This document shows, one piece after another, positions 7,900 through 56,547 of a stretch of 64,000 nt of DNA; within the stretch, counting starts at the first letter, position 1; each line of letters starts with the position of its first letter. The stretch comes from Gekko japonicus (lineage: Eukaryota): assembly GCF_001447785.1 (NCBI RefSeq), contig NW_015172560.1, forward strand, positions 371,240 to 435,239, given 5' to 3'. The notes under the pieces were generated by a model. It ran no database searches and was not told the DNA's origin. It saw only the letters and a program-made list of their open reading frames with translations. Made by a program: the position numbers and the translations under genes.

Positions 7900-9900
7900 A
7901 AAGTAAAAAACCCGGCGGGATCCTAGCTTCTTCCCTCGGGGTTTGACATTCACACACACACAAACACCCCGCGCCGCGCAAACGATCCCATTGGGTGACT
8001 CTGCTTTGCCTGCCTCCGATCGCTTCTCTTCCTTTATGCCCCCTCTGGGCAGACATTCGAGGCTTGAGCTCCCTGGCGAGCCCCACGAGGCTCTCTGGAG
8101 CTGGCACACTCGGCTCCTTAGTGACAGCAGTTGTTGCTCTATTTCAGAACGAGGGTGGAAAGAAAGGGAAAGTGGGTGTGTGAACAGCTGAAGGGTTTGT
8201 TGCTCATAGGGGATGGCGGCGGAGACGGCTTTTGGCTCCTGGGCGCTGCCACCACCGCCGCCGTCGCCGCCTTTGGCACTGCAGTTCGACAAGGAGAGCA
8301 GCCGAAGTGCAAAATTCGGGGTGGGGGGGCAGGGAAGGGAGGCGGGGCTAAGCCAGAAGGGCTGCAGATCGCCGCGCACGTTACTCCCCCCCCCCTTCTC
8401 GCACCCCCGTCTCTTCTTCTGCTGCCTCCTCCTAAGTAAAATGCAGCGAAAGGAAAAATTCGGGGGTTGGGGGGGGGGCAGGGAAGGGAGGCGGGGCTAA
8501 GCCAGAAGGGCTGCAGATCGCCGCGCACGTTAGTCCCCCCCCTCTCGCACCCCCGTCTCTTCTTCTGCTGCCTCCTCCTAAGTAAAACGCGCAAGCAGCC
8601 TGGCTAATCCTCGCTTCCCACGAGCATGAGGAGGATTTGGGGGGTTTTGTCTTGGGAGCTCCGTTGCCGGCGTAGCAGGCTAAGAAGCTGAGCAAGGAGG
8701 ATTCTTACGCACGAGCTGGGAAGGGTGGGCAAAGGACACTCCAGAGAGCCTGCCAAGGAAACGTCGCCGCTGTGGCTCAGCGCCCCCCGGGCAGCGGCAA
8801 AGGCGCCAAGAGGCGCACGGGCGGAGGAGCAGCGGCTGCGCCCCCAGCTTGGGAAAGGCAGGGCTGGGGACTGAAGCAGCGCGCGCACACACGCGCACGC
8901 GTTCCCCTCGCCAGGGGCTAGCACGCCGCACACCCACAGAGCGGCAGCCCTTCCAGGCAAACACAGCCAGGCAGCTGCCGCCCGCGGAAGACGCCAGGCG
9001 ACTGGCCGCTTCGCCGTTCGCCTACCTCCACCTCGCCCAGGCGCTTCCCGGGCAGCCGAGGCGGGGAAGGGACTCGGTGGGCACGCGGAGAGGTCCGGGC
9101 GGGAGCTGGCGAGGAGGAGGGCTGCCGAGCGATGCCTTTGCGGCGGGTCCGGGCGGGAGCGCTGAGGCGAGGCGGGAAAAACGGCGCCAAAGAGCGACGG
9201 CCCGTCTGACCGACTGCAGGCGGCTTCGCGCCCACCCAGCCGCTCTCGCCCTCGCCCCCGCGCTCCCCTCTCCCTCAACTTCCCGGAGTGGCTGAAGACG
9301 CCGCGAGACCGAGCTGCAGTACGGAGCAGCGAGGCAAAAGCGACAATGGGACCTCTCTGCAGCAGGGGCGCCTGGTGTTGAGCGGGGAGGGGGGAGAGTC
9401 CGAAGAGAGCCCTGTCCCCCCCCCCCTTTCACCCAGCAGCAGGTCGGTGACGCTGGCTAGCCCCTCCGTAGTATGTCTGCACTCCGAAGGAAATTTGGGG
9501 ACGATTACCAGGTCGTGACCACCTCGTCCAGCGGCTCGGGCTTCCACCCCCAGCAGCAGGCGTCAGCCCACAAGAAAAAGCGCCAGCGGTTCGTGGACAA
9601 GAATGGCAGGTGCAACGTGCAGCACGGCAACTTGGGCAGCGAGACCAGCCGCTACCTGTCAGACCTGTTCACCACCTTGGTGGATCTCAAGTGGCGCTGG
9701 AACCTCTTCATCTTCATCCTCACCTACACCGTGGCCTGGCTCTTTATGGCCTCCATGTGGTGGGTCATTGCCTACATACGGGGTGACCTGAACAGATCCC
9801 ACGACGATGAGTATACTCCCTGCGTGGCCAATGTCTACAACTTCCCCTCTGCCTTCCTGTTCTTCATAGAGACAGAGGCTACCATTGGTTATGGCTACCG
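7900..9900 (+). promoter_or_regulatory. KCNJ3: CpG island: KCNJ3 promoter, 5' UTR and start of exon 1
   Basis: Very GC- and CpG-rich compared with the CpG-depleted background; several GC boxes (GGGAGGCGGGG, GGGCGGG); overlaps the start codon. TSS not determinable from sequence. Confidence 0.85.
8311..8590 (+). repeat. Near-identical ~135-bp tandem duplication in the promoter
   Basis: aaaattcgggg...cctaagtaaaa at ~8311-8441 and ~8455-8587; differences mostly in homopolymer lengths. Confidence 0.9.
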
Positions 9901-10156
9901 GTACATTACGGACAAATGTCCGGAGGGCATCATCCTCTTCCTGTTCCAGTCCATCCTGGGCTCCATTGTGGATGCATTTCTCATTGGCTGTATGTTCATC
10001 AAGATGTCACAACCTAAGAAACGGGCAGAGACGTTGATGTTCAGTGAACATGCTGCTATCTCCATGAGGGATGGCAAACTCACGCTCATGTTCAGGGTGG
10101 GCAACCTCCGCAACAGCCACATGGTCTCTGCACAGATCCGCTGCAAACTCCTCAAA
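9473..10156 (+). CDS. KCNJ3: KCNJ3 (GIRK1/Kir3.1) coding exon 1, aa 1-228: N-terminus, M1, pore (TIGYG), M2, start of cytoplasmic domain
   Basis: [23 protein letters not shown]...[20 protein letters not shown]...[20 protein letters not shown]...QIRCKLLK matches vertebrate GIRK1; donor AAA/GTAAGT at 10157, phase 0. Confidence 0.98.
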
Positions 10157-11766
10157 GTAAGTTAGTTGAAGTTTTAGTCCTCTATGCTAATTGCATCTGC
10201 ACATTCCTCTAGGTTGTCTCTTTCTCTCAAAGTCATTTGTACCTGTCTCCTCTTTTTCCAGTCTACTCTTCACATCTCCCTCAACTCATTATCAGCCTGG
10301 TACCTTCCTTTGACTTTTCCCACTTCTAGTGCATTTGCTTGGGAATTTCCCATGAGTTCTTATCTGTGTATGTCTACTCCAGTTGTCTCCAGGGTACATA
10401 CCGGTAATTGCTATTCTGCTCTCCTTAGAAGGCTCAGGATGGATTATCTGATTTTTAAAATCCCAATTCCATTTTCTTTTCTCTTTATTCCATGTAAATA
10501 GCTTCTCAAACTAGGATTCAAGCTCTCTTCCAGACTTTTACATTTAGATTTTCTTCCCCCTCCCTGTTCTTTTTGTGCTGTCTGAAATATTTCACTAGGA
10601 CACATTGCCTCTTTTTTTATTCCTTAAACCCACTAAACCATCTGTTCCTATCTTTTTGTTATCAATTCCTACTGAAGACCAGTATATGCTTGTGTATTTG
10701 TAATAAAACGAATTGATTACATCTGGTGCTGCTAAAAGAACAAAATACTTTTCCAGACCAGTCCTTTGAACAAGTCATAACCCCTTCCCCCATACCATAA
10801 AGGTGTTTCTTTGAGTTCATTGGAGGCCTAACTTCAGGAGTGTGGCTTGTGTGCAGTGACGGTATCATTGACAGCTGTAACCTTTAAAAAATTAAAATAC
10901 CTAGTTATAGTACCATCGGCACTGTACATTGCTACGTAATGGTGACTATAGATTGTTTGTGCCCCCTTGTGCACAGTGTCCTAACCACCAGGGGCACCTT
11001 GAGGTCTTACATGCTCCTCCCTCCCTCCCTCTTTTGCACATGCATTCTCACTTTCCTTGGGAGTTTTACATCTAACTGGTTAATGTTGCCTCTGCTCTGG
11101 CACTTTCTGTTGACCATAACCAGCACCAAAGTGTAACTTGCTGCCATGGTTTGAAAACCGTGGTTTGGTCCAACTATGATGACAGTTAACATTGATGCAG
11201 ATGTAGCTGTTGGGGCAAAACATTAAGTCAGATGACAAAATAGAAGTTACTTTCTTGGAATTCCTGAGTATTATGCTTGAGGTTTGCAAGCCTTTCAACC
11301 TTGGTTTTTGAGGACGGTGGAGCTCAGTGGCTTCAGTGTAACATATATGCAGCATGCTATATATGAGTAGTTCCAAATGGGTTCAGGTGGGTTCACCCAT
11401 TGCTTTCACCATTGCTCACTAGTCATTACTAGTTAATACATTTTAGTTTGTTGCTGTGACCGCTAAGCATGATACAGCTTCATAGGGTGAAGACAGATGT
11501 AACATTCAGACCAAAAGTTAGCAATTTACATAACAGACTTAAGCCTATGAATGCTGGTTCAGCCAAGGTACCAGCAGTTAGAGCTCAAGAGCCTCTTCCA
11601 GTTCCCAGCTGATTACAGGATGAAAAAATGAAAAGTAAATTGTGAAGAAAGGAAGTTTGTAACTACAGCTGGCCTTGCCCAGGATGGTAGACATAACTGT
11701 GATAGACAATAGAAGCTGAAACCTGGCATTTCTCTCTCCCAGAGGACATACATATTCCAAATTTGT

Positions 11767-16417: not shown

Positions 16418-16621
16418 TGTGGCCTGGTTCTGTCCTAAGTAAACTTGTTTATTTGCTTCTAACAGTGCATTCATATGATAAACATAACTTTGATTAAACT
16501 AAAGCTGGGAACCCACAAGGACTTGTGGGGGGCATCTCCCTTTCCTCTATATCCCCCTCAACACAGTATTTTCTTTCTCCCTCCTCCTGGCAACCCCTAT
16601 ATCCTTACCTTTCCCTGATTC

Positions 16622-17280
16622 CAGGACTGTAGCCCAAGAGGGCCCTTGGGGGCAATGCTTCCTCCTGAATTTGCCCTGCCTCCTCATCTCCCATTCCCCC
16701 CTCCCCAGGAGGTGGAGGGAGCCTGGGGCTGCTGGTCAGGAGGGAAGTGGTGAGAGCGGCTAGCTTGCTGGCTGATGCCCACCCAGTGGAGTGAATGAAT
16801 GAGAGCAGGTGGGGAAGGAGTGTGCGCTTGGCGCTGGCACAGTTGGTTCCGGCCCAGCCTAAATTGCCGAGTGAGCAAGAGCCATGAGCCAGATTGGAGG
16901 GCAGAGGGGAAAGCAGATGTGGTGCTTACCTGCCTGTGGTGTGGCTGGCTTGCTTTCCTCCCTTGCTTGCTGGCTGCCCTGTCGTCAGCTCCCTGCTGCT
17001 GCCCCAACTCCTCCGGAGCAAGCTGCTCACTCAGGGTTTGTTTGGTGTGGCAAGCCCAAGAGCAGCCCCAGCCGGCCTACTGGCTGGGAGGCAGCCTTAC
17101 CTGGTAGCGTGTTCCAGCCCCCCTGCCAGACAGGCCGAGGCAGTGAGAGAGGCAGGGGCCCTGCTTGCTTGACCTTAGGGTGCTGCTTGACCCTCCTTGC
17201 TTGACCCAAGGGTGTGTGGCTGCTGTTTGACCCCACCCAAAACGTGCTCCCCCACCAAAAAGTTTCTGGCTGCAGGGCTG
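16622..17280. mobile_element. hAT non-autonomous element
   Basis: Termini caggactgtagcc / ggctgcagggctg; TSD cctgattc / cctgcttc. Confidence 0.65.
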
Positions 17281-17334
17281 CCTGCTTCCTTCCCACCCAC
17301 CCACTGTTTAACTGTCACAAAACATCTTTAGCTA

Positions 17335-17563
17335 TATTATTTATTTATTTCTCTTATAACCCCCTTTATCCACAAGGGGGACCAAAAATCACCTTACAAC
17401 ACTTTCCCCTGCTCCATTTTATCCTCCCAACAACCCTGTGAGGTAGGTTAGCCTGACAATGTGTGACAATCCCAGGGCCTCTCAGTGAGCTTCCACAGCA
17501 GAGTGAGGATTCAGACCTGTATATCTGATATCCTAATTTGAAACTAACAACTATACCACACTG
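17335..17563 (-). mobile_element. MIR/Squam3-like SINE
   Basis: ccattttatcctcccaacaaccctgtgaggtaggttag...aactataccacactg. Confidence 0.7.
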
Positions 17564-19032
17564 TCGTGGTATAGTTGTATAGTTGTTAGTTTCAAATTAG
17601 TCGAACAGTAGTAAGCAGCCAGTCCTGGGTGAGTCATGCAAGTTACATAGTATCAAGTTGCTCAGTGGTCACTGCCAGATCTGGAACTGATGAGTTGACT
17701 CCTCCCTCAGAGGCCAAAACAGCCCTAGAAAGGGCCTTCTCCCCTCCACTTCCCTTTTACTGACAGAAACCAAGGCTTGAAGGTTGGCAATAATGTTGTG
17801 GTTTCCTAGCATCCCCCACAGCAGCAACAGAGAGTGCATTAATTCCTACAGTTGTTGCTTCTATTATTTTGGGGTGTTTTAATACCCTGATGCTTGTTAG
17901 TTTGTTTGTTTAGATTTCAGAAGGGTTTCCCCCCCCAGCTTTGTAGAAAGATCTGTCTTCTCTGTTCATGGCTACAGTCTCTGAATTTAATTATTCACAT
18001 ATGGGGCAAGTTGAAAATTAAATATATTGATGTGCATGGACAGAGCTGGTTGCCAAGCTTGCACATGGATCTCACTCTGCCATCAATCCTTTCTTTCTCG
18101 TGCAGAGCATGATGAAGGATATTGCAGTTAAAAGGTAGCTCTGGCTATCCATGACGTATGAATGCAGGCTGTGGTTTAACTGGAGTTAGTTTTCCTTTCA
18201 CTGACCAAATTTTAAACCTGGATATAACTGTAGTTTAAAAACCCAGTTAGTGAGAGGAAGACTAATCTTGGTTAATCTGCGTGGCTGCATTTGTACAACA
18301 TGGTTTGCTGGAGTTTGAAAACTAACCATGGCCCATTATGCATGCATATCTTACTGCAGGTTTTCAGAGCAGTAAGCCTTTAATCTTGACTTTGGATTCT
18401 GTGCCCACTTTATGCACCATTCTTTTTACTCTGGTGTGTTTATTCTACAGCTACAATTTAGAAAACACACACTTTTCTAAATAGGGGTGGAGTGTCACTT
18501 GTGATGTGTGGGGGGTGGCATGCAAAGGTGTTTTTTTAAATTACACAGTTGCCCTAACACAGTTGTGTAGTAGCATTCAGCAAGCGCCTTCCATTTAAAT
18601 CCTCGTGGTTCAAGCTTTGCACAGGCATTTTTGTGTTAGTTTGTTGAATGAAAATGAACAGAAGAGAATACAGGCAAAGGGGAAAACCCAATGTTGAAAT
18701 TGACCAGACTTTTTTTTGAAACTGAGAAGCAGCAGCAAAGCCCCGTTTTTCATATTGCCAAGGACTAGGGGATTCTCTGCTGTATTATTGGCCACTGTGA
18801 AAAATGGGAAAGAATCACATGATCTCATAATATGGGGAAACATGTTGAGTGTACAGAATGTGTGGTAGAACCCACTGACACTGGCATTGCAAACTGTGAT
18901 AGTTGGCAACGTTTATGTGTGTACATGTACCTGTGCAGAGCTGGCTGCAATTCTATCACACTTTGCACAGGGCTGCAATTTGTATGGGGGAGGAGTCCTC
19001 TCACAGAAGCCCGGGAGAGCTTTTAAAGTCTT

Positions 19033-26939: not shown

Positions 26940-27094
26940 NNNNNNNNNNNNNNNNNNNNNNNNNNNNNNNNNNNNNNNNNNNNNNNNNNNNNNNNNNNNN
27001 NNNNNNNNNNNNNNNNNNNNNNNNNNNNNNNNNNNNNNNNNNNNNNNNNNNNNNNNNNNNNNNNNNNNNNNNNNNNNNNNNNNNNNNNNNNNNN
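26940..27094. other. Assembly gap (155 N)
   Basis: Run of N. Confidence 1.
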
Positions 27095-29598: not shown

Positions 29599-31200
29599 TT
29601 ATTTATTTATTTGGGTTTGTATTCTGCCCTCCCTGCAAGTGGGCTCAGAGCGGATCACATCATAAATAGATAAAAACATACACTAATAAATATAACAGTA
29701 TTTAAAACAACTAAGTTATACAGTTTAAAACAGCCGTGTATAAACACAATCACAGTTTCAGTTGGAGTGGTAGAGTCCAGAGATCATCTTAATCTGGGAC
29801 AAATAATGATGTGAAACTTCAGTGAAGGAGGTCAGCTTCATTGGATGGCCTCTGCCTCAACCAAAGGCCTGGCAAAACAGCTCCGTCTTACAGGCCCCAT
29901 GGAATGATAATAAGTCCTGCAGGTAGGGCTGCCAATTCCCCCCAGGGGGCGGATTTCCCCCCGCTTTGGAGGCCCGATTTCCGCCGCCGCGGAATCGGGC
30001 CCTGGGGGAAACCCCACCCCGGCATGCACGTCACCCGGATGTGACGTGATGACGCCGGGCACGCTGGGGGCGGGGCCCCAGCCATTTGAGGGGAAAACAT
30101 AGAGTTTCCCCCTCAAATGTCTGTGGCCCCGCCCTCAGCGTGCCCGGCGTCATCACGTCATATCCGGGTAATGTGCATGTGGCGCGCATGCGCAAAGTGC
30201 CGAGCGGGAGCCCCCCACCACAAGGTAAGAACGATTTGGCAATCCTACCTGCAGGGCCCTGATCTCAAATGGGAACTTGTTCTAGTGGGTCAGGGCCAAA
30301 AAAGCCCTGGCCCTGGTCAAGGCTAGACAGATGACCCTCGGGCTGGGGACTAGCAGCAGATGCTGAACCATTGAGCACAAGGCTTTCCGGGACACATATG
30401 GGGAAAGGCAGTTCTGCAGGCATGTCGGTCTGTGGCCATGCAAGACTTTAAAGGTCAAAACCAGTGCCTTAAAGTGGATCTGGTACTCAATCAGTGCAAA
30501 TAGCATAGCAGCGACTGGGTGTGTGCCCACAAAGGTGACACAGTCAGCAAGTCCTCCACTGCATTTGTGCACCAGCTGGAGTTTCTGGATCAGCAGCAAG
30601 GGCAAGCCCGCATAGAGTGAGTTACAGTAATCAAGCCTGGAAGTGACCATTGCATTGGTCACTGTAGCCAAGTCCTGGGGGGAGAGGTAGGGAGCCAGCT
30701 GCCTGATCTGCCGAAGATGATAAAAGGCAGACCTGGCAGCAACTGTGGTGACCTGGGCCTCCATAGTAAGCAAGGCATCCAGGATTACCCCCAGGCTCTT
30801 CACCCTCTGGACTGGCACAGGTCCTGACTCAACCGCCCGGGTTTCGGTACAGGCCCTCTGTCTTTGTGGGATTAAGTTTCAGCCAGCTCTGCTGCAACCA
30901 TCCAGCCATGGCCTCCAGTGCCCTGGTCAGATTTTCTGGCGTGGAATCTGGGCAGCTGCCCATCAGCAGATAGAGCCGGGTGTGATCTGCATATGGGTGG
31001 CACCCCAGACCAAGCTCCCAGGCCAACTGGGCGAGGGGGCTCATATAGACATTAAACAACATTGGCAAGAGGATTGCCCCCTGTGATACTTGACTGTGGG
31101 TATCACTGAGAGATCTCCCCGCCAGGCGCCACCCTCTGTCCCTGACCATGGAGAAAGGAGAAAAACCATTGCAGGGCCATCCCTCAAACTCCTATGTTGG
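29599..31200 (-). mobile_element. L2 LINE, 5'-truncated, RT remnant
   Basis: QGAILLPMLFNVYM...YADHTRLY, VKSLGVILD, SRLDYCNSLYAGLP; (TTTA)n tail. Confidence 0.9.
29924..30247. mobile_element. Young CpG-rich hAT MITE nested in L2
   Basis: TIRs tagggctgccaa / ttggcaatccta; perfect TSD cctgcagg; internal inverted repeat. Confidence 0.9.
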
Positions 31201-43060: not shown

Positions 43061-43923
43061 CACAGCTCTCAGCCTGACATGCCAACGTCAGATGGAGTGC
43101 GGAACCCAGGCTGCCTTGCCACCAGAGGTAGGTTGTTTCTCTGTGCTTTTTTATTTTGGGAGGAATTTAACCCCCCTGTGTATTTTTTTAAACATTTCAG
43201 ATTTTTCTGCATACTTGGAGATTTCCCCAAGTGTGCAGAAAGATCTATTTAGGCTCAATGTGGCCCCAATCTGTGGAGTTACGTAACAGCTGATGGGGGC
43301 CATGGGTGTAGGGATCCCAGCCCCCTGGTCCGGGAGGGGGATCCCTCAATTTGGAGTGGGCTTCTCCATCCTCAAATGACATTTTTGGGGCACTTCCAGT
43401 AAAACCAGAAGTACCATCCCTGACATGATGATATCACTCCCGGGTCATACCGGAAATGTTGCACAGGGACACTCTGGTATTTGGGCAAATTCTATGGTTT
43501 TGAGGGCGAAAACCATAGCATTTCACCCAAGTACCAGAGTGTTCCTGTGCAATGTTTCCGGCACAATTACGTCACTTCCGGGTGATGTCATTGTGTCAGG
43601 GACAGTGTGTGATGTCTCCCCACCTTTGCAACAAAGAAGCTCTTTGTTTCCATGTGCCTGTTTTAAACTAATGTTTCTCCAGAGAGTGGGATAAAACCCT
43701 GTAACAGTGGTATTCCCACCCTGTGTTCACGAAAATTTATAAATAGCAAATAACTCTGTGTGTGTGTGAGTGAGTGTGTGTTTGTATTTATAACCTGTAT
43801 ATACACATGTAACCTGTAGTATATTGAAATTACACACATAAGTCACTGAGTTTTTACTCTTCAAACTACATAACATGGTAACTAGAATAGAATTCATTTT
43901 TCAGAATTTACAAATGTGATGGC

Positions 43924-50008: not shown

Positions 50009-50291
50009 GTTTGGTGTAGTGGTTAAATGTGCAGACTCTAATCTGGGAGAACCAGGTTTGATTTCCCACTCCTCCACTTGCACCTGGCTGGATGACCTTG
50101 GACAAGCTGTAGTTTTGATAAGAGCTGTTCTTGAAAAAAGAGCAGTTTCTTTCAAGAGCTCTCTCAGCCCCACCTACCTCACAGGGTGTCTGTTATGGGG
50201 AGGGGAAGGGAAAGGAGTTTGTAAGCTGCTCTGGGACCATTAGGTAGTGAAGGGCGGGGTATAAATCCAATCTCTTCTTCTTCTCTTCTTC
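50009..50291 (+). mobile_element. Squam3-type SINE
   Basis: gtttggtgtagtggttaa head, (CTT)n tail. Confidence 0.85.
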
Positions 50292-50824
50292 TTACTGGCA
50301 GGTTATGTCTGCAATTGCCATGACTTGTGTGTCCAAGGGCAGTTAGTGAGATCAACTGGGGTTAGCAGAAAGATCAGGGGAATGAGCTTCTTTTGCTTTT
50401 GAAACATTACCAGGTATGATGACACCCCACAAAAGACAATAGTATGCCCTGATCTCCTAAAATGCCTGCTTTAATATCTCCTATCAGCTTTCCAGAATGT
50501 TGAATTGCTGATGAAGACTGTACTGATCAAGTGCACGGTGTGCATTTGGTAGATATGTGCTAAAGACTTTGACTGTAATGTGTGCACTCATATTGAGTGG
50601 GCTTACTGTGCCTACTCATGGGTATCCACAGGACAGAGGCCATCTGGAAGAACTGAAATTATACACACTATCCTAACAGTGGAATGCCCCAGTGCTCTTT
50701 GTTCTGTCTCATGATCAGCTTATTCAACATATGCTCCTTTAGAAGCATTTGGATTAGAGGAGTTTGGTCACTGGTAAGCATTCTGGCTGAGCAGATATCA
50801 TCAGTGTGTATCATTATATATATA

Positions 50825-51270
50825 CAAGAGGGGGACCCGCGATACTCGCGGGGGGGGAGAAGAGCTCCATCTCCTCCCCCCCGCTCGATCTCCCCGAGGC
50901 GGTGAGGCCGGTTCCCCCCTGGCTCCGAGGCGGCGGCGGAGAGGCTGGTCCTCCCCCCCCCTCGGCGGCGGCGGCCGGCAGTGGCAGCGGCGGCGAGGCT
51001 AATATCTCCTATCAGCTTTCCAGAATGTTGAATTGCTGATGAAGACTGTACTGATCAAGTGCACGGTGTGCATTTGGTAGATATGTGCTAAAGACTTTGA
51101 CTGTAATGTGTGCACTCATATTGAGTGGGCTTACTGTGCCTACTCATGGGGACTGGCCCACGTGGGGACTGGCCCACATGTGCACAAACCTCCCCCCGCC
51201 CCCCAGCTGCCCCCGGAGCGCTGATTTAGCGATCCGCACTCCGGGGGCAAGTTCGCTATTATATATATAT
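50825..51270 (-). mobile_element. Non-autonomous Helitron-like element containing a captured local host segment
   Basis: Minus-strand 3' end: hairpin cccgcga-gta-tcgcggg ending 11 nt before terminal CTTG|T; (TA)n-rich 5' end; no TIR or TSD; CpG-rich. Confidence 0.65.
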
Positions 51271-53023
51271 TCTCATGTTGTTGGCATGTGTCTTTATACG
51301 TATTTGTGTGTATCATATTTGCATGTGCACGCGCGCATGCACACACACACACACACACACATACACATAAGCATGCAAAGTACTTGGTCTTCCATTGTTC
51401 TGTACTGACAGAAAGTATGCATCTTGAGGATTTGCAATATGTACTGTGTACCTCACTCTGATTTTTAAATAGTTATTCTTTTCTGATAAAATATTATTTA
51501 AAAACCCTTACAGCCTAAAAAGTGAGATAAAAATTTATAAATAATAATAATATCTGATAAATGCACAGATGACTCAGGCTAAATAACTATCTTATAAACG
51601 CAAAATATAAACAAAATAATATAAATTTTTAAAACATGTATTTTGAATATAGTGTTAAAAAATCACCCTCACTTACTTACAATGCAGCCGTAAGCATATT
51701 TACACCTTTTTTAGCCAGTTGACTTCAGTTGACTTAGAAGGATGTAACTGTTTAGGAGTGCACTGTTAATTTGCTTGCTAAAACTAAAAATTCCTACACC
51801 ATCTCAAGACAATACTCTAGTTCAAAATTTGGATAGGCCTCAGAAGATGAGGATTCCAGAGCTGAGGAAAAAATAATCCTTACATGTCCCATTTACTAAT
51901 TTGCCACATGAATGGTATGCTCATAAGACTTATCTCAGCTGATCTATGATTGTAGTCATGGGCAGGATACAGGCAATCTCTGAGGTATGTAGTACCTAAG
52001 ACATAGAAGATTTCAGTCAATTTCCCTATATTGATTTACTTTCCTTTATGAACAATGAGTAAGTAATGAGACTTCAGGACCTGGGCTGAATTAAAAGCAG
52101 AGGTATGTCTTTTGCATACCGATGAAACCTTACATCACATTTCAGTTTGTGTGTTAAGGAACTAATATATTTGGTAGAAGATACAGTTTCTGTGAAGTTC
52201 ACCCTGGGACTGCCTAAGCACGGTTGGATTGTCTGATGACCTTCTTTCCTATCACTTAATTATAAAGTATTGTTCCATGGATTGTTGCTTCTAATTAATT
52301 ATACTTAGTAGGATTCATACACTACATTTTAATTTCTGTACCTGCTCTATTTTCTTCATGTCTCTTTGGGCATTTTTTAAAAAAGTGCTAAAGGAGTCAA
52401 TTTACCTTTTATTGAATAATTAATTATGCAGAGTTTAAAATAAATGGAGCTGACTTGTCAGCAATAGAATTCAGGAATGAGAGTATTAAAACATCGGCTT
52501 CTAATGAGTATGTGCACTCATCTGTTATTTTCTGCATTCAAAGTTCTAAATTCACTTGGTGATTCTTTTCCCCCAACAGGTGATTAAGAAGTAGCATTGA
52601 TATATAGTGTATATATTATTTGTGATATTTTTACATTTCAGTAGTGTTAAATAACAAAATGTATCTTATAAAATAAAAGCAAAATCAGATATTCCAAAGA
52701 AAAAAAGGATTTATTTATGCTTATATAAGAAAGTAGGAAACACTATTTAAAAATTATTCAAGGTCAAATGCAACATTGACTGAAGCTGTGCTTAACTGGA
52801 AAACTAGACATTAATGGTTTTGGTCATGAAAGTGAGCTGGTAATCATGAAATTCTTATGAGCAAAGCTTGCTTTGATGATAATTTAAATTGCTGTTATAG
52901 CCACTCTTCATAATTAATTTGGAGTTTGTTGATAGACAGCATAGAGAGAGATAAGATTTCCAGAAACTTTCAAGTGGGGGGGAGGACTTGAAATTTTAGG
53001 GGAAATTGAAATATGTGCAGTGC

Positions 53024-54328: not shown

Positions 54329-56547
54329 CAACCCACAATGGTGTTTTCTCAGGATTTAAATGATAGTTTGGCTTTCATTGCTTTAACTGAATGTTGGTTA
54401 TTAAAAAGTTATGATTTTAATGTTGCTTAAGATGAGTTTTGATGTGCTTAGAGAACTCTGAAGTTCTCTGACTAAACAATAATACTAAAAAAAAGGAATA
54501 TCTTAATAGAATTTAAATAAGTGACCATTACTGACAATCATATAAAGGAGACTGAGTAGTCTATTCATACTTCCCCAGGGACAGCTAGTGTCACATACTT
54601 GAAGTGAAAAACAAATTTAGATTTAGAGTGGATCATTCTCATATAGTAGGGCTGTTCTTGTATATATGACCAGCAAACCAGTGGTTTCATGTTGATCTAG
54701 GTAAATGTGGATTGGGGAATCCAATTTGAAGCTAACTGGCAATGACTAGCAACAGTTTGTAAAAATAGGTTCTAGGCAAATAGCTCTTCTCTGATTCACC
54801 AGAGGCCTCAGGAAGCAATAATAAGCTCCTTGTTTTGGCTATGCAAGACTATTGCAATGACACACGACCAGAACCAGCCAGAACGTGTGGGCAGTGGAGG
54901 CAAGGGTTGGGAATAGCAAGTGGGACTTAAGAGGGGTAAAAGCAGACAGGGGTTGTTGCAGGGGAGATGCTAGTTGATCAAGTAGGAGAGAGAGACCATG
55001 TGACTGGTTCTCTTTTTTATCGGGGGATCCAGGAGGTGGGTGGTGGCCGTGCCAACCTCCTGGCCCACGTCCCTGTTAGTCTGTCCCAAAACTAATCCTA
55101 TTGGTTGCATGTAGGGAGGGGTGGTTACCTATAAGGAGTGGCCAATATCGTAATCTAAAGCCTTACTCAAGGAACGGCACCTGGGCAGGTGTGAAAACCT
55201 TGGCGTCAGGATGCTTCATTGTAGTGTTGATGAAGCTGGCCATTCCATTGTAAACCAAATGTCTATTTGGCAGGAAATACCAAAGCAGGAACAAAATAGT
55301 GATGTGTCCTACGTGACTACAACTATTTCTGCAATGGGGGCTGTCTCTTCTCAAAGCTGTTGTTTCTCATTGCTCACAATAATGGAGGTGTGTGCTTCTT
55401 CACCAGGCTGGTAACTGTGTAGCTGAAACCTCATTTACATGTAAGGCTTGTGCAGGCACCTTCTATGTGTTGCATCACAACAGGTGACTTAAAGTGTCCA
55501 GTTCTCTGAGCCTGTGTGTGTGTGTGCACAGTCCATTGTGTGTAGCAATAAATATAAGTCCATAAAGCAAAATATCAATCTCATTCTCTAACAGGTGCTT
55601 CTAGTCTCTTTAACATTTAATTGCTGACAGCTGTTTGATGGGTCAGCTTCCTCTCTCTCCCTCCCCATTCTTGCACCTTTCTGAAACCAAAACACATCCC
55701 AAAATTCCTGGAGATAAATTTTTGTTTCTTCAAAATTTTTGGAAGTGTTTGGATCATTTCGGATACCCCATAAGTGATACAAAACAGCAGCTTTTGGGTT
55801 TAATTTCAGCTCAGCTATATCCAAATGCATACCCCTAATTTACATTTTATGTTGTGTTTTCCAAACTCCTATTAGCATTCTCATGAGTTTTATATATGGA
55901 GGCTATTTCTGCCCATGACAACAATATTCAGTTTCCATGGCTTCCTTCTCTTTTTGTCAGTAGAGTGGAGAAGGAAGGTGAGGAAAGAATAAACTTGGCT
56001 GGGAACATTTCAGAGTCTCGTACAAATAATGATTTTCTATAAGTTTTTGTGCAGTATGTATTATACAAGCGAGGGACCCACAATGACTTGTGGGGAAGCA
56101 TCTCATTTCCCCTTCACCCATTATTTCCTGAAAGCCCCCACAGGCTCCCCCCCTTTCCTGCCTTTGTCTCTGCTTCCCACCCACCAGCCAAGCCACCTTT
56201 ATCTACATTCCTGTCTTATGCTTTCTCTCCATCCTTTCTCCTGGCAGCCTCTACCTAGGAAAACTACAGCACCGTTGCACAGTAGGGAACCTGCAAGGAC
56301 TTCTGTGTCACTGAAAATAGCCCGTTCCCTAACTTTTACGGACAGTAATTAGGGCTTGAAAGCTGATAATTTTGTTGTGGTTGCCTAGCAATGGCCACTG
56401 GGGGTATCACTTTCTTAAAGCTATGGCTGCTGCTTCTATTTTTTTCTTTTTTCGTGGGGGTTAATTCCCCATAGGTCATGGCTCCAGTCTCTGGATTTAA
56501 GGATCCACAGATTTTGCCATGTTGGGAATTAGATATATTGATGGAGG

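What the first reader, a model, noticed from the sequence alone, without database searches (positions are those of the whole stretch)
50472..51270. Helitron-like element carrying a perfect 151-bp copy of neighbouring host intron DNA
Seen: 50472-50622 is repeated without visible mismatch at 51000-51150 (offset 528). The copy sits inside a CpG-rich element (50825-51270) embedded in a (TA)n context. On the minus strand that element ends in a 7-bp hairpin (50836-50852) 11 nt before CTTG|T, has an 11-bp hairpin near the other end (51208-51249), and has no TIR or TSD. The right junction uses tggg microhomology with the element's tggggactggcccac repeat. Established: a subterminal hairpin with a CTRR-like end and no TSD is the Helitron signature, and Helitrons capture host DNA by a debated mechanism. 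Inference: a recent capture event with the donor still adjacent, favouring local template-switch or filler-DNA repair over end bypass. The terminus is CTTG rather than CTRR and a 5' TC is not evident.
Basis: partly seen in the sequence, partly recalled or inferred. Interest (0 to 1): 0.8.

Follow-up and report, generated by a model that had tools for sequence, protein, structure and literature searches.

The report
Lizard Helitron holding copied neighbour DNA
A young, non-coding rolling-circle transposon (Helitron) in an intron of the potassium-channel gene KCNJ3 contains a perfect 151-base copy of DNA lying 202 bases away; this is either a very recent break-repair patch or an assembly error, and the reads I could lay do not decide between them.

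Summary
In detail: 50472-50622 equals 51000-51150 exactly (151 nt). The copy sits inside a CpG-rich element in KCNJ3 intron 1.

The Helitron reading is largely supported. Both GC-rich ends are high-copy in this species (about 12,000 copy-equivalents). I found two older copies in the same window (56066-56541 and 16501-18030). They show host A | 5'-TC ... hairpin + 11 nt + CTTG-3' | host T, with no TSD and no TIR. The 3' hairpin is kept through two compensatory pair changes. CTTG ends are documented for Helraiser and maize. The young copy lacks the 5' TC. Its apparent 12-bp flanking repeat is the element's own TA-rich 5' start, not a TSD.

The capture claim is unproven. The junctions (TGGG microhomology on one side, blunt on the other, donor in cis and in direct orientation) fit templated break repair (filler DNA) and exclude end bypass. 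But no contig from two other individuals covers the second copy. One contig runs unbranched through the donor. And 151 nt is a standard Illumina read length. I put real at about 0.45 and artefact at about 0.4.

Unchecked first-reader notes on other pieces of this genome describe the same CTTG-ended Helitron family. Filler-DNA capture by Helitrons is already published. Interest is modest.

The parts
50472..50622 (+). Donor: single-copy intronic DNA, the ancestral copy of the 151-mer
   Evidence: Single-copy depth in X1 and X2. A contig of a second species (X13, about 8% diverged) runs colinearly through 50292-50686. It is identical to 51000-51150.
50813..50824 (.). Host TA-rich target flank next to the element's 3' (CTTG) end; host A at 50824
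   Evidence: Sequence. Contigs of X1 (50267-50843) and X2 (50713-50843) run from unique flank 19 nt into the element.
50825..51275 (-). Young non-autonomous Helitron-like element, 451 bp (right boundary +/-4 nt); sense strand is the minus strand
   Evidence: High-copy ends; homology to the two older copies; CpG o/e 0.65-0.79.
50825..50900 (-). 3' terminal region (RTS): CTTG terminus (50825-50828), 11-nt spacer, 7-bp hairpin at 50836-50852
   Evidence: The hairpin is conserved in 3 copies with 2 compensatory pairs. Depth at 50828 is about 780,000 against about 60 for single copy in X1.
50901..50999 (-). GC-rich, (GGC)n-rich interior with uneven copy number: bin means about 53,000-67,000, but only about 88-108 at 50968-50976 in X1
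   Evidence: tables 2 and 4. No homology to the interiors of the older copies.
51000..51150 (+). Perfect copy of 50472-50622, in direct orientation; 147 nt of new DNA plus the 4 shared nt TGGG
   Evidence: No contig of X1, X2, X4 or X13 was laid on 51005-51138.
51147..51178 (+). Tandem 16-mer TGGGGACTGGCCCAC(G/A) x2; its first TGGG (51147-51150) is the microhomology shared with the donor's end (50619-50622)
   Evidence: family D9; junction sequences.
51151..51275 (-). 5' terminal region (LTS): TA-rich start (51258-51271) and the hairpin with 18-nt arms at 51208-51249
   Evidence: z = -4.15. Searches show LTS homology with 56420-56541 and 17922-18030, including the TA-rich start. Depth is about 700,000-766,000 in X1.
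56066..56541 (-). Older, CpG-decayed copy of the family (476 bp): host A | TCAATATATC... ...CGCTTG | host T
   Evidence: (local score 56 against shuffles 22 +/- 2.8).
16501..18030 (-). Third copy (1,530 bp) with unrelated repeat debris as interior: host A | TCAATATATT... ...hairpin...GCTTT
   Evidence: nhmmer hits at 16502-16549 (E 1.7e-3) and 17922-18031 (E 2e-6); sequence; alignments.
43201..43304 (-). LTS-related fragment of a related family or subfamily, with no matching 3' end found
   Evidence: nhmmer E 7.7e-5; alignment.

Best explanation
A recently inserted, non-autonomous Helitron of a high-copy lizard family with a CTTG 3' end lies on the minus strand in KCNJ3 intron 1, at a host A|T in a TA-rich tract. 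After insertion, the element broke between its 5' terminal region and its GC-rich interior. The 3' end ...CCCA of one broken end annealed to TGGG at 50619-50622 on the resected other side, 377 nt from the break. A polymerase copied 147 nt (50618 down to 50472). The new strand then let go and was ligated, without homology, to the other end at 50999. This is filler DNA, that is, templated end joining of the polymerase-theta or SD-MMEJ type; a two-step replicative template switch gives the same product. The result is a perfect, direct-orientation copy of nearby intron DNA between the Helitron's two ends. It would travel with the element if the element moved again. What is shown: the repeat in the assembly, the family and its ends, and the junction sequences. 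What is inferred: the break, the order of the steps, and that the copy exists in the animal.
For: Family membership. Both ends have about 12,000 copy-equivalents in two DNA runs of the species. Two older copies in the window have both ends, A|TC and CTTG|T junctions, and unrelated flanks (4/15 and 3/15 identities by my count from the flank strings printed). The 3' hairpin is kept with 2 compensatory pairs. CTTG ends are documented (PMC4778049).
The element is really at this site in other animals: X1 and X2 contigs cross the left junction by 19 nt.
Direction of copying: the donor is single-copy and present colinearly in a second species.
Repair signature. There is a 4-nt microhomology at one junction and 0 nt at the other. 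The template is in cis, 528 nt away, in direct orientation. A 16-nt tandem repeat sits right at the junction. The setting is hairpin-rich and 78% GC. A 4-nt overlap is too short for overlap-based assembly and would arise by chance in about 1 of 256 random abutments.
Filler-DNA acquisition with 2-13-bp junction homologies is published for insect Helitrons (PMC6544945).
Against: There is no independent support for either internal junction. Depth is 0 on 51005-51138 in all four runs. X1's contig runs unbranched from 50267 to 50843, through both ends of the donor, at a depth (60.3) no higher than its neighbour's (62.4). A second copy with different flanks should branch a k=31 graph and raise the depth. 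X2 shows only non-reference alleles at 50590 and 50604, and no contig with the reference alleles that a second copy would carry. 151 nt is exactly a common Illumina read length. The window holds a 155-N run at a SINE tail (26940-27094), which may be a sized gap of a scaffolded, gap-closed assembly. Templated insertions of about 150 nt are much longer than the usual 3-30 nt. This copy also lacks the 5' TC.
Confidence: 0.45

Rival explanations
1. The Helitron is real, but the internal 151-bp copy is an assembly or gap-closing artefact. The GC-rich, high-copy interior could not be assembled from short reads, and a read-length piece of nearby sequence was placed in the hole. One possible route is a deletion allele joining 50622 to 51151 through the same TGGG, which would have supplied the right-hand junction.
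For: The length of 151 nt equals a standard read length. The identity is perfect. It lies inside a repeat where k=31 contigs of X1 and X2 stop, at 50843. No contig was laid on 51005-51138. X1's contig is unbranched through the donor with no depth excess. X2 has no reference-allele copy. The 155-N run at a SINE tail may be a sized gap of a scaffolded assembly. X1 and X2 hold only 0.79 and 0.60 of the sampled words of 50300-51500.
Against: Assemblers and gap closers join on overlaps of tens of bases, not 4 and 0. A chance 4-nt match with the element's own tandem unit is about 1 in 256. Fill limited by reads spanning the junction would give fewer than 151 nt of donor-identical sequence. No other such duplication exists in the 64-kb window. 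X1 and X2 appear to be other haplotypes (5 differences in 615 nt to the right of the element), so absence there fits a young polymorphism. GC bias and graph simplification could also remove the junction words.
Confidence: 0.4
2. The copy was made by the Helitron machinery itself at the moment of integration: a template switch of the rolling-circle or second-strand polymerase onto nearby target DNA. On this reading, capture and insertion were one event.
For: The donor lies only 202 bp beyond the 3' end and in the same orientation. The young copy has an irregular 5' end with no TC, which could mark an abnormal integration.
Against: Nothing ties the event to transposition. The insertion's left junction is present in X1 and X2, while the copy seems absent there. 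That would make the copy younger than the insertion. Ordinary break repair explains every feature.
Confidence: 0.05
3. The element is not a Helitron but a retroposon or other element that makes target-site duplications, with the 12-bp ATTATATATATA repeat as its TSD.
For: An exact 12-nt direct repeat flanks 50825-51257. The young copy has no 5' TC. The 3' end is CTTG rather than CTRR.
Against: The right-hand TA-rich stretch is conserved inside the element in two older copies whose flanks show no duplication. There is no tRNA-like part, no Rfam hit above threshold, no A-tail and no TIR.
Confidence: 0.07

Closest known systems
Canonical Helitrons (HLE1), e.g. non-autonomous HelibatN families and Helraiser of vespertilionid bats
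   Same: No TIR and no TSD. Insertion between host A and T. 5' TC in the older copies. A short GC-rich palindrome about 11 nt before the 3' end. An AT-rich stretch just inside the 5' end. Thousands of short non-autonomous copies with variable interiors. A CTTG 3' end was seen for Helraiser de novo ends and in maize (PMC4778049).
   Different: The family's regular 3' end is CTTG rather than CTRR. There is a second, larger hairpin near the 5' end. The young copy lacks TC. No RepHel partner was identified here.
Filler-DNA acquisition in the insect Hel1 Helitrons (PMC6544945), after the Gorbunova and Levy filler-DNA model
   Same: A host fragment of about 70-150 bp sits between intact Helitron ends. 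There is short homology at a source junction. End bypass is excluded because the fragment is internal.
   Different: There, the donors are elsewhere in the genome and the acquisitions have been amplified in many copies. Here, the donor is 202 bp away in cis, the copy is 100% identical, only one locus is known, and it is not verified by reads.
Templated insertions of polymerase-theta end joining / MMBIR (e.g. PMC7165422, PMC8421209)
   Same: The template lies close to the break. There is microhomology at the priming junction and little or none at the closing junction. An extra short repeat sits at the junction.
   Different: At 147-151 nt, it is several-fold longer than typical events. The polymerase and pathway are inferred, not tested.
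HLE2 (Helentron / Helitron2)
   Same: Hairpins near the termini; rolling-circle type; high-copy non-autonomous derivatives.
   Different: HLE2 has 12-16-nt terminal inverted repeats and inserts between T and T (PMC11417382). Neither is seen here.

Membership tests
Helitron, canonical group (HLE1) | 5' terminus TC joined to a host A | tested here: inconclusive
   Met in the two older copies...CCA|TCAATATATC at 56541 and ...ACA|TCAATATATT at 18030. Not met in the young copy, whose homologous position reads A|TGAGAAT (51275).
Helitron, canonical group (HLE1) | 3' terminus CTRR joined to a host T | tested here: not met
   The terminus is CTTG|T in the young and old copies and CTTT (or CTT|T) in the third. 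CTTG|T is a documented non-canonical Helitron end (PMC4778049), so the letter of the rule fails while the known range is not exceeded.
Helitron, canonical group (HLE1) | Short palindrome about 10-12 nt upstream of the 3' end | tested here: met
   A 7-bp stem lies 11 nt from the end in all three copies. Two pairs changed on both sides (GC to AT) with pairing kept.
Helitron, canonical group (HLE1) | No target-site duplication; insertion into an A|T dinucleotide | tested here: met
   Old copy: host A (56065) and T (56542), with unrelated flanks. Third copy: host T at 18031, and A at 16501 if the end is CTT. Young copy: host A at 50824. The 12-nt repeat of the young copy is explained by the element's own TA-rich start. 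No empty site from a relative could be obtained.
Helitron, canonical group (HLE1) | No terminal inverted repeats | tested here: met
   The repeat finder shows only TA-tract complementarity between the ends (I9).
Helitron, canonical group (HLE1) | An autonomous RepHel-encoding partner sharing the same ends | not testable with these tools
   The window has no RepHel ORF.
Helitron, canonical group (HLE1) | Multi-copy family with conserved ends and variable interior | tested here: met
   Summed contig depth of the ends is about 700,000-780,000 against about 60 for single copy. The three copies measure 451, 476 and 1,530 bp, with unrelated interiors.
HLE2 (Helentron / Helitron2) | 12-16-nt terminal inverted repeats and T|T target | tested here: not met
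   No TIR. The older copies show A|T. Definition from PMC11417382.
SINE / LINE-dependent retroposon | TSD, 3' tail, pol III-type head | tested here: not met
   No TSD in the older copies. No tRNA-like part. No Rfam family.
Filler-DNA / templated-insertion repair product | Insert identical to a nearby template, microhomology at a junction, and presence in the organism's DNA | tested here: inconclusive
   Template and 4-nt microhomology are met. Presence outside the assembly is not shown, and contigs of two other individuals give no support.

The most novel reading that the evidence does not exclude
A Helitron caught at the first step of cargo acquisition. A still-young element, probably polymorphic in the population, has just taken up 147 nt from 202 bp away by microhomology-primed repair synthesis. 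Donor, acceptor and both junctions are intact, so individuals with and without the patch would give a before-and-after pair for the filler-DNA model of Helitron gene capture.
Probability: 0.4. Interest if true: 0.55.

Novelty: new member of a known kind. Interest (0 to 1): 0.33.

Why it matters
How Helitrons pick up host DNA is still argued: end bypass, filler DNA or template switching. Most captured pieces are old, and their donors are far away. If this copy is real, it is a clean natural example of the filler-DNA route, with the donor still next door and both junctions readable. It would also show that capture can be an ordinary repair accident after insertion rather than part of transposition. 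It remains one locus and is unverified, and published work already supports filler-DNA acquisition in insect Helitrons. If the copy is an artefact, the lesson is practical: perfect read-length duplications inside high-copy GC-rich repeats should be checked against reads before they are interpreted.

Tried and rejected
1. 12-bp TSD, and hence a retroposon or DDE element. Rejected: the right-hand TA-rich stretch is conserved inside two older copies that have no flank duplication.
2. Left boundary further out, at CAGTGTGTAT. This was suggested by similarity between the young and old flanks. Rejected: the third copy's flank is unrelated and homology starts at the CAAG/AAAG position.
3. The GC-rich parts as rRNA or another structured RNA. 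No Rfam hit near threshold; no tRNA.
4. HLE2 / Helentron. No TIRs and an A|T target.
5. End bypass. The 202 bp between the 3' end and the donor were not copied.
6. Fetching sister copies from outside the window. Exact-pattern scans found nothing: metagenome contigs, viral contigs, prokaryote genomes.
7. Empty site in a related species. The X13 contig ends at 50686 and nothing unique is laid on 50737-51340, so this is unresolved.
8. A systematic assembly fault. There is no other perfect duplication of this kind in the window, and the scan's notes record no such pattern.
9. Boundary inference from bin depths. Abandoned because depth within bins is uneven: in X13, 1,114 at 50828 against a bin mean of 21,260.

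Full report
THE OBSERVATION

The repeat is real in the assembly. 50472-50622 and 51000-51150 are identical over 151 nt, and the identity stops abruptly on both sides. It is the only exact repeat longer than 41 nt in the 64-kb window.

The second copy sits inside a GC- and CpG-rich block. 50825-50999 has 78% GC and CpG o/e 0.79. 51151-51257 has 69% GC and o/e 0.65. The window average is 42% and 0.28.

A 7-bp stem at 50836-50852 lies 11 nt from the CAAG (minus strand CTTG) at 50825-50828. A hairpin with 18-nt arms lies at 51208-51249 (z = -4.15 for the right-hand region).

The last four bases of the copy, TGGG, are also the first four of a tandem 16-mer of the element at 51147-51178. The other junction, 50999/51000, has no shared base.

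The window is the KCNJ3 (GIRK1) locus. Exon 1 is the ORF at 9473-10165, recognised from my own knowledge of the protein. The finding therefore lies about 41 kb into intron 1.

WHAT THE GC-RICH BLOCK IS

I laid Logan contigs of two DNA runs of the same species (X1 and X2; single-copy depth about 60 and 40-53). Summed depth was about 740,000 on 50804-50870 and about 700,000-766,000 on 51139-51272. It was about 53,000-67,000 on the bins between, but only about 88-108 at 50968-50976. So both ends belong to a repeat with roughly 12,000 copy-equivalents, and the interior is shared much less widely and unevenly.

In a second species (X13) the left end is present at much lower depth and the right end is almost absent.

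A profile search of the window then found older relatives. A CpG-decayed copy lies at 56066-56541. It was first seen as a 14-mer and 16-mer match and as a local alignment scoring 56 against 22 +/- 2.8 for shuffles. A 1,530-bp copy lies at 16501-18030, and a related 5'-end fragment at 43201-43304.

Read on the minus strand, the two older copies begin TCAATATAT(C/T)TAATT..CAAC directly after a host A. They end in the hairpin, 11 nt and CTTG (CTTT in the third copy) directly before a host T. Outside these points their flanks are unrelated: 4/15 and 3/15 identities, counted by eye from the flank strings printed. There is no duplication of the target and no terminal inverted repeat.

The 3' hairpin is kept in all three copies. 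Two of its seven pairs changed on both sides, GC in the young copy and AT in the old ones.

These are the defining features of canonical Helitrons as summarised in PMC11417382, with one exception: the end is CTTG instead of CTRR. CTTG|T ends were, however, produced by the reconstructed bat Helitron Helraiser and are reported for maize (PMC4778049).

Unchecked first-reader notes on other pieces of this genome independently describe a Helitron family with a CTTG end and variable interiors. I treat these as leads that agree with my result, not as evidence.

No RepHel partner could be sought.

TWO CORRECTIONS TO THE ANATOMY

First, an exact 12-nt direct repeat ATTATATATATA flanks 50825-51257 and looks like a target-site duplication. 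It is not one. The right-hand TA-rich stretch aligns with the conserved ...AATTA(G/A)ATATATTGA end of the older copies, so it belongs to the element's 5' terminal region. The left-hand one is host microsatellite. The element therefore runs from 50825 to about 51275 (451 bp).

Second, at the position where the older copies have A|TC, the young copy reads A|TGAGAAT. Paralogous contigs also stop aligning at or before 51272.

THE 151-BP COPY, IF IT IS REAL

The donor is the ancestral copy. It is single-copy, and a contig of the second species passes colinearly through 50292-50686.

In Helitron orientation the order is: 5' region, copy, GC-rich interior and 3' end, 202 bp of host, donor. All are in the same orientation.

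End bypass would have carried the 3' end and the 202 bp along with the donor, so it is excluded.

The junction pattern is a 4-nt microhomology where synthesis would have been primed and a blunt join where it ended. The template is 528 nt away in cis. An extra 16-nt tandem unit sits at the junction. The setting is hairpin-rich and 78% GC.

This pattern is what filler-DNA or templated end joining, or a two-step replicative template switch, produces (general knowledge; PMC7165422 and PMC8421209 for the pathways).

The most economical history has four steps: insertion of the Helitron, a break inside it, priming on TGGG at 50619-50622 and copying of 147 nt, then ligation to 50999. This is an in-situ repair accident. 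Nothing shows that the Helitron enzyme took part.

Filler-DNA acquisition with 2-13-bp junction homology is already described for insect Helitrons (PMC6544945).

IS IT REAL?

This is the weak point. I had one read-laying run, and the runs were Logan contigs, not raw reads.

In favour of the locus: contigs of X1 (50267-50843, no mismatch) and X2 (50713-50843) run from unique flank 19 nt into the element, then stop as expected at a high-copy repeat. So the insertion itself is present in other animals.

Against the copy:
- No contig of any run is laid on 51005-51138.
- X1's contig passes unbranched through both ends of the donor, although a second copy with different flanks should branch a k=31 graph.
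- X1's contig depth (60.3) is no higher than its neighbour's (62.4).
- X2 carries non-reference alleles at 50590 and 50604, with no contig showing the reference alleles that a second copy would have.

These points fit either absence of the copy in those animals or loss of weakly covered GC-rich junction words during graph clean-up. X1 and X2 also differ from the assembly at several sites just right of the element, so they are probably other haplotypes. A 100%-identical, very recent event may well be polymorphic.

Two coincidences pull in opposite directions. The length of 151 nt is a standard Illumina read length. The window also has a 155-N run at a SINE tail, which may be a sized gap as seen in scaffolded, gap-closed assemblies. 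On the other hand, a 4-nt overlap with the element's own repeat unit is what biology does, not what software does, and as a chance abutment it has odds of about 1 in 256.

I could think of no standard assembly step that yields a 0-nt and a 4-nt junction around exactly one read length. I also cannot exclude a hybrid of a deletion allele (50622 joined to 51151 through the same TGGG) and gap filling.

I put the real event at about 0.45, an artefact at about 0.4, and the remainder on other readings.

COMPARISON AND VERDICT

The element is a new member of a known kind: a non-autonomous canonical-type Helitron with a CTTG end, in a lizard-type genome. In the published record, Helitrons and internal, filler-type cargo are already known.

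The internal copy, if genuine, is a neat and unusually fresh example of filler-DNA acquisition with the donor still adjacent. But it is one unverified locus, and the mechanism is not specific to Helitrons.

WHAT COULD NOT BE DONE

- The genome itself cannot be searched for sister copies.
- Pattern scans of metagenome, viral and prokaryote collections and a word search with the element's open frame were blank.
- No empty site from a relative was recovered.
- The N run at 26940-27094 was left as it is.

Noticed in passing
window 56066-56541 (-): A CpG-decayed 476-bp copy of the same Helitron family, with clean host A|TC ... CTTG|T junctions. An old SINE starts about 5 nt beyond its 5' end.
   Followed up: yes
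window 16501-18030 (-): A 1,530-bp copy of the family. Its interior holds unrelated repeat debris, including a 27-nt-arm hairpin at 17533-17600 and a SINE-like piece near 17430-17470. It is an example of the family's variable cargo.
   Followed up: partly
window 43201-43304: A fragment related to the family's 5' terminal region (nhmmer E 7.7e-5), with a different outer end and no matching 3' end nearby. It may belong to a sister family.
   Followed up: no
window 29916-30255: A 340-bp MITE-like element with 23-nt terminal inverted repeats (CCTGCAGGTAGGGCTGCCAATTC...) around a 76-nt-arm, 91% complementary palindrome at 30023-30179. It is CpG-rich.
   Followed up: partly
window 9473-10165 (+) and 8150-9600: KCNJ3 (GIRK1) exon 1 ORF of 230 aa, with an upstream CpG island. 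Inside the island is a 123-bp direct repeat, 96% identical (8319-8441 and 8469-8587).
   Followed up: no
window 26940-27094: A run of 155 N begins inside the 3' part of a young SINE copy. I did not try to fill it or look it up.
   Followed up: no
window 51293-51371: Below-threshold mir-297/mir-466-like Rfam hits (40 bits against a gathering score of 90) fall on a (TG/CA)n compound microsatellite. This is most likely low complexity, not a miRNA.
   Followed up: partly
window 50590, 50604, 51529, 51555, 51932: Contigs of other individuals (X1, X2) differ from the assembly at these sites. The haplotype to the right of the element in the assembly differs from the one shared by X1 and X2.
   Followed up: no
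window 50009-50284: A squamate tRNA-derived SINE copy with a (CTT)n tail, with summed contig depth in the tens of millions in every run laid, including the presumed RNA run.
   Followed up: no
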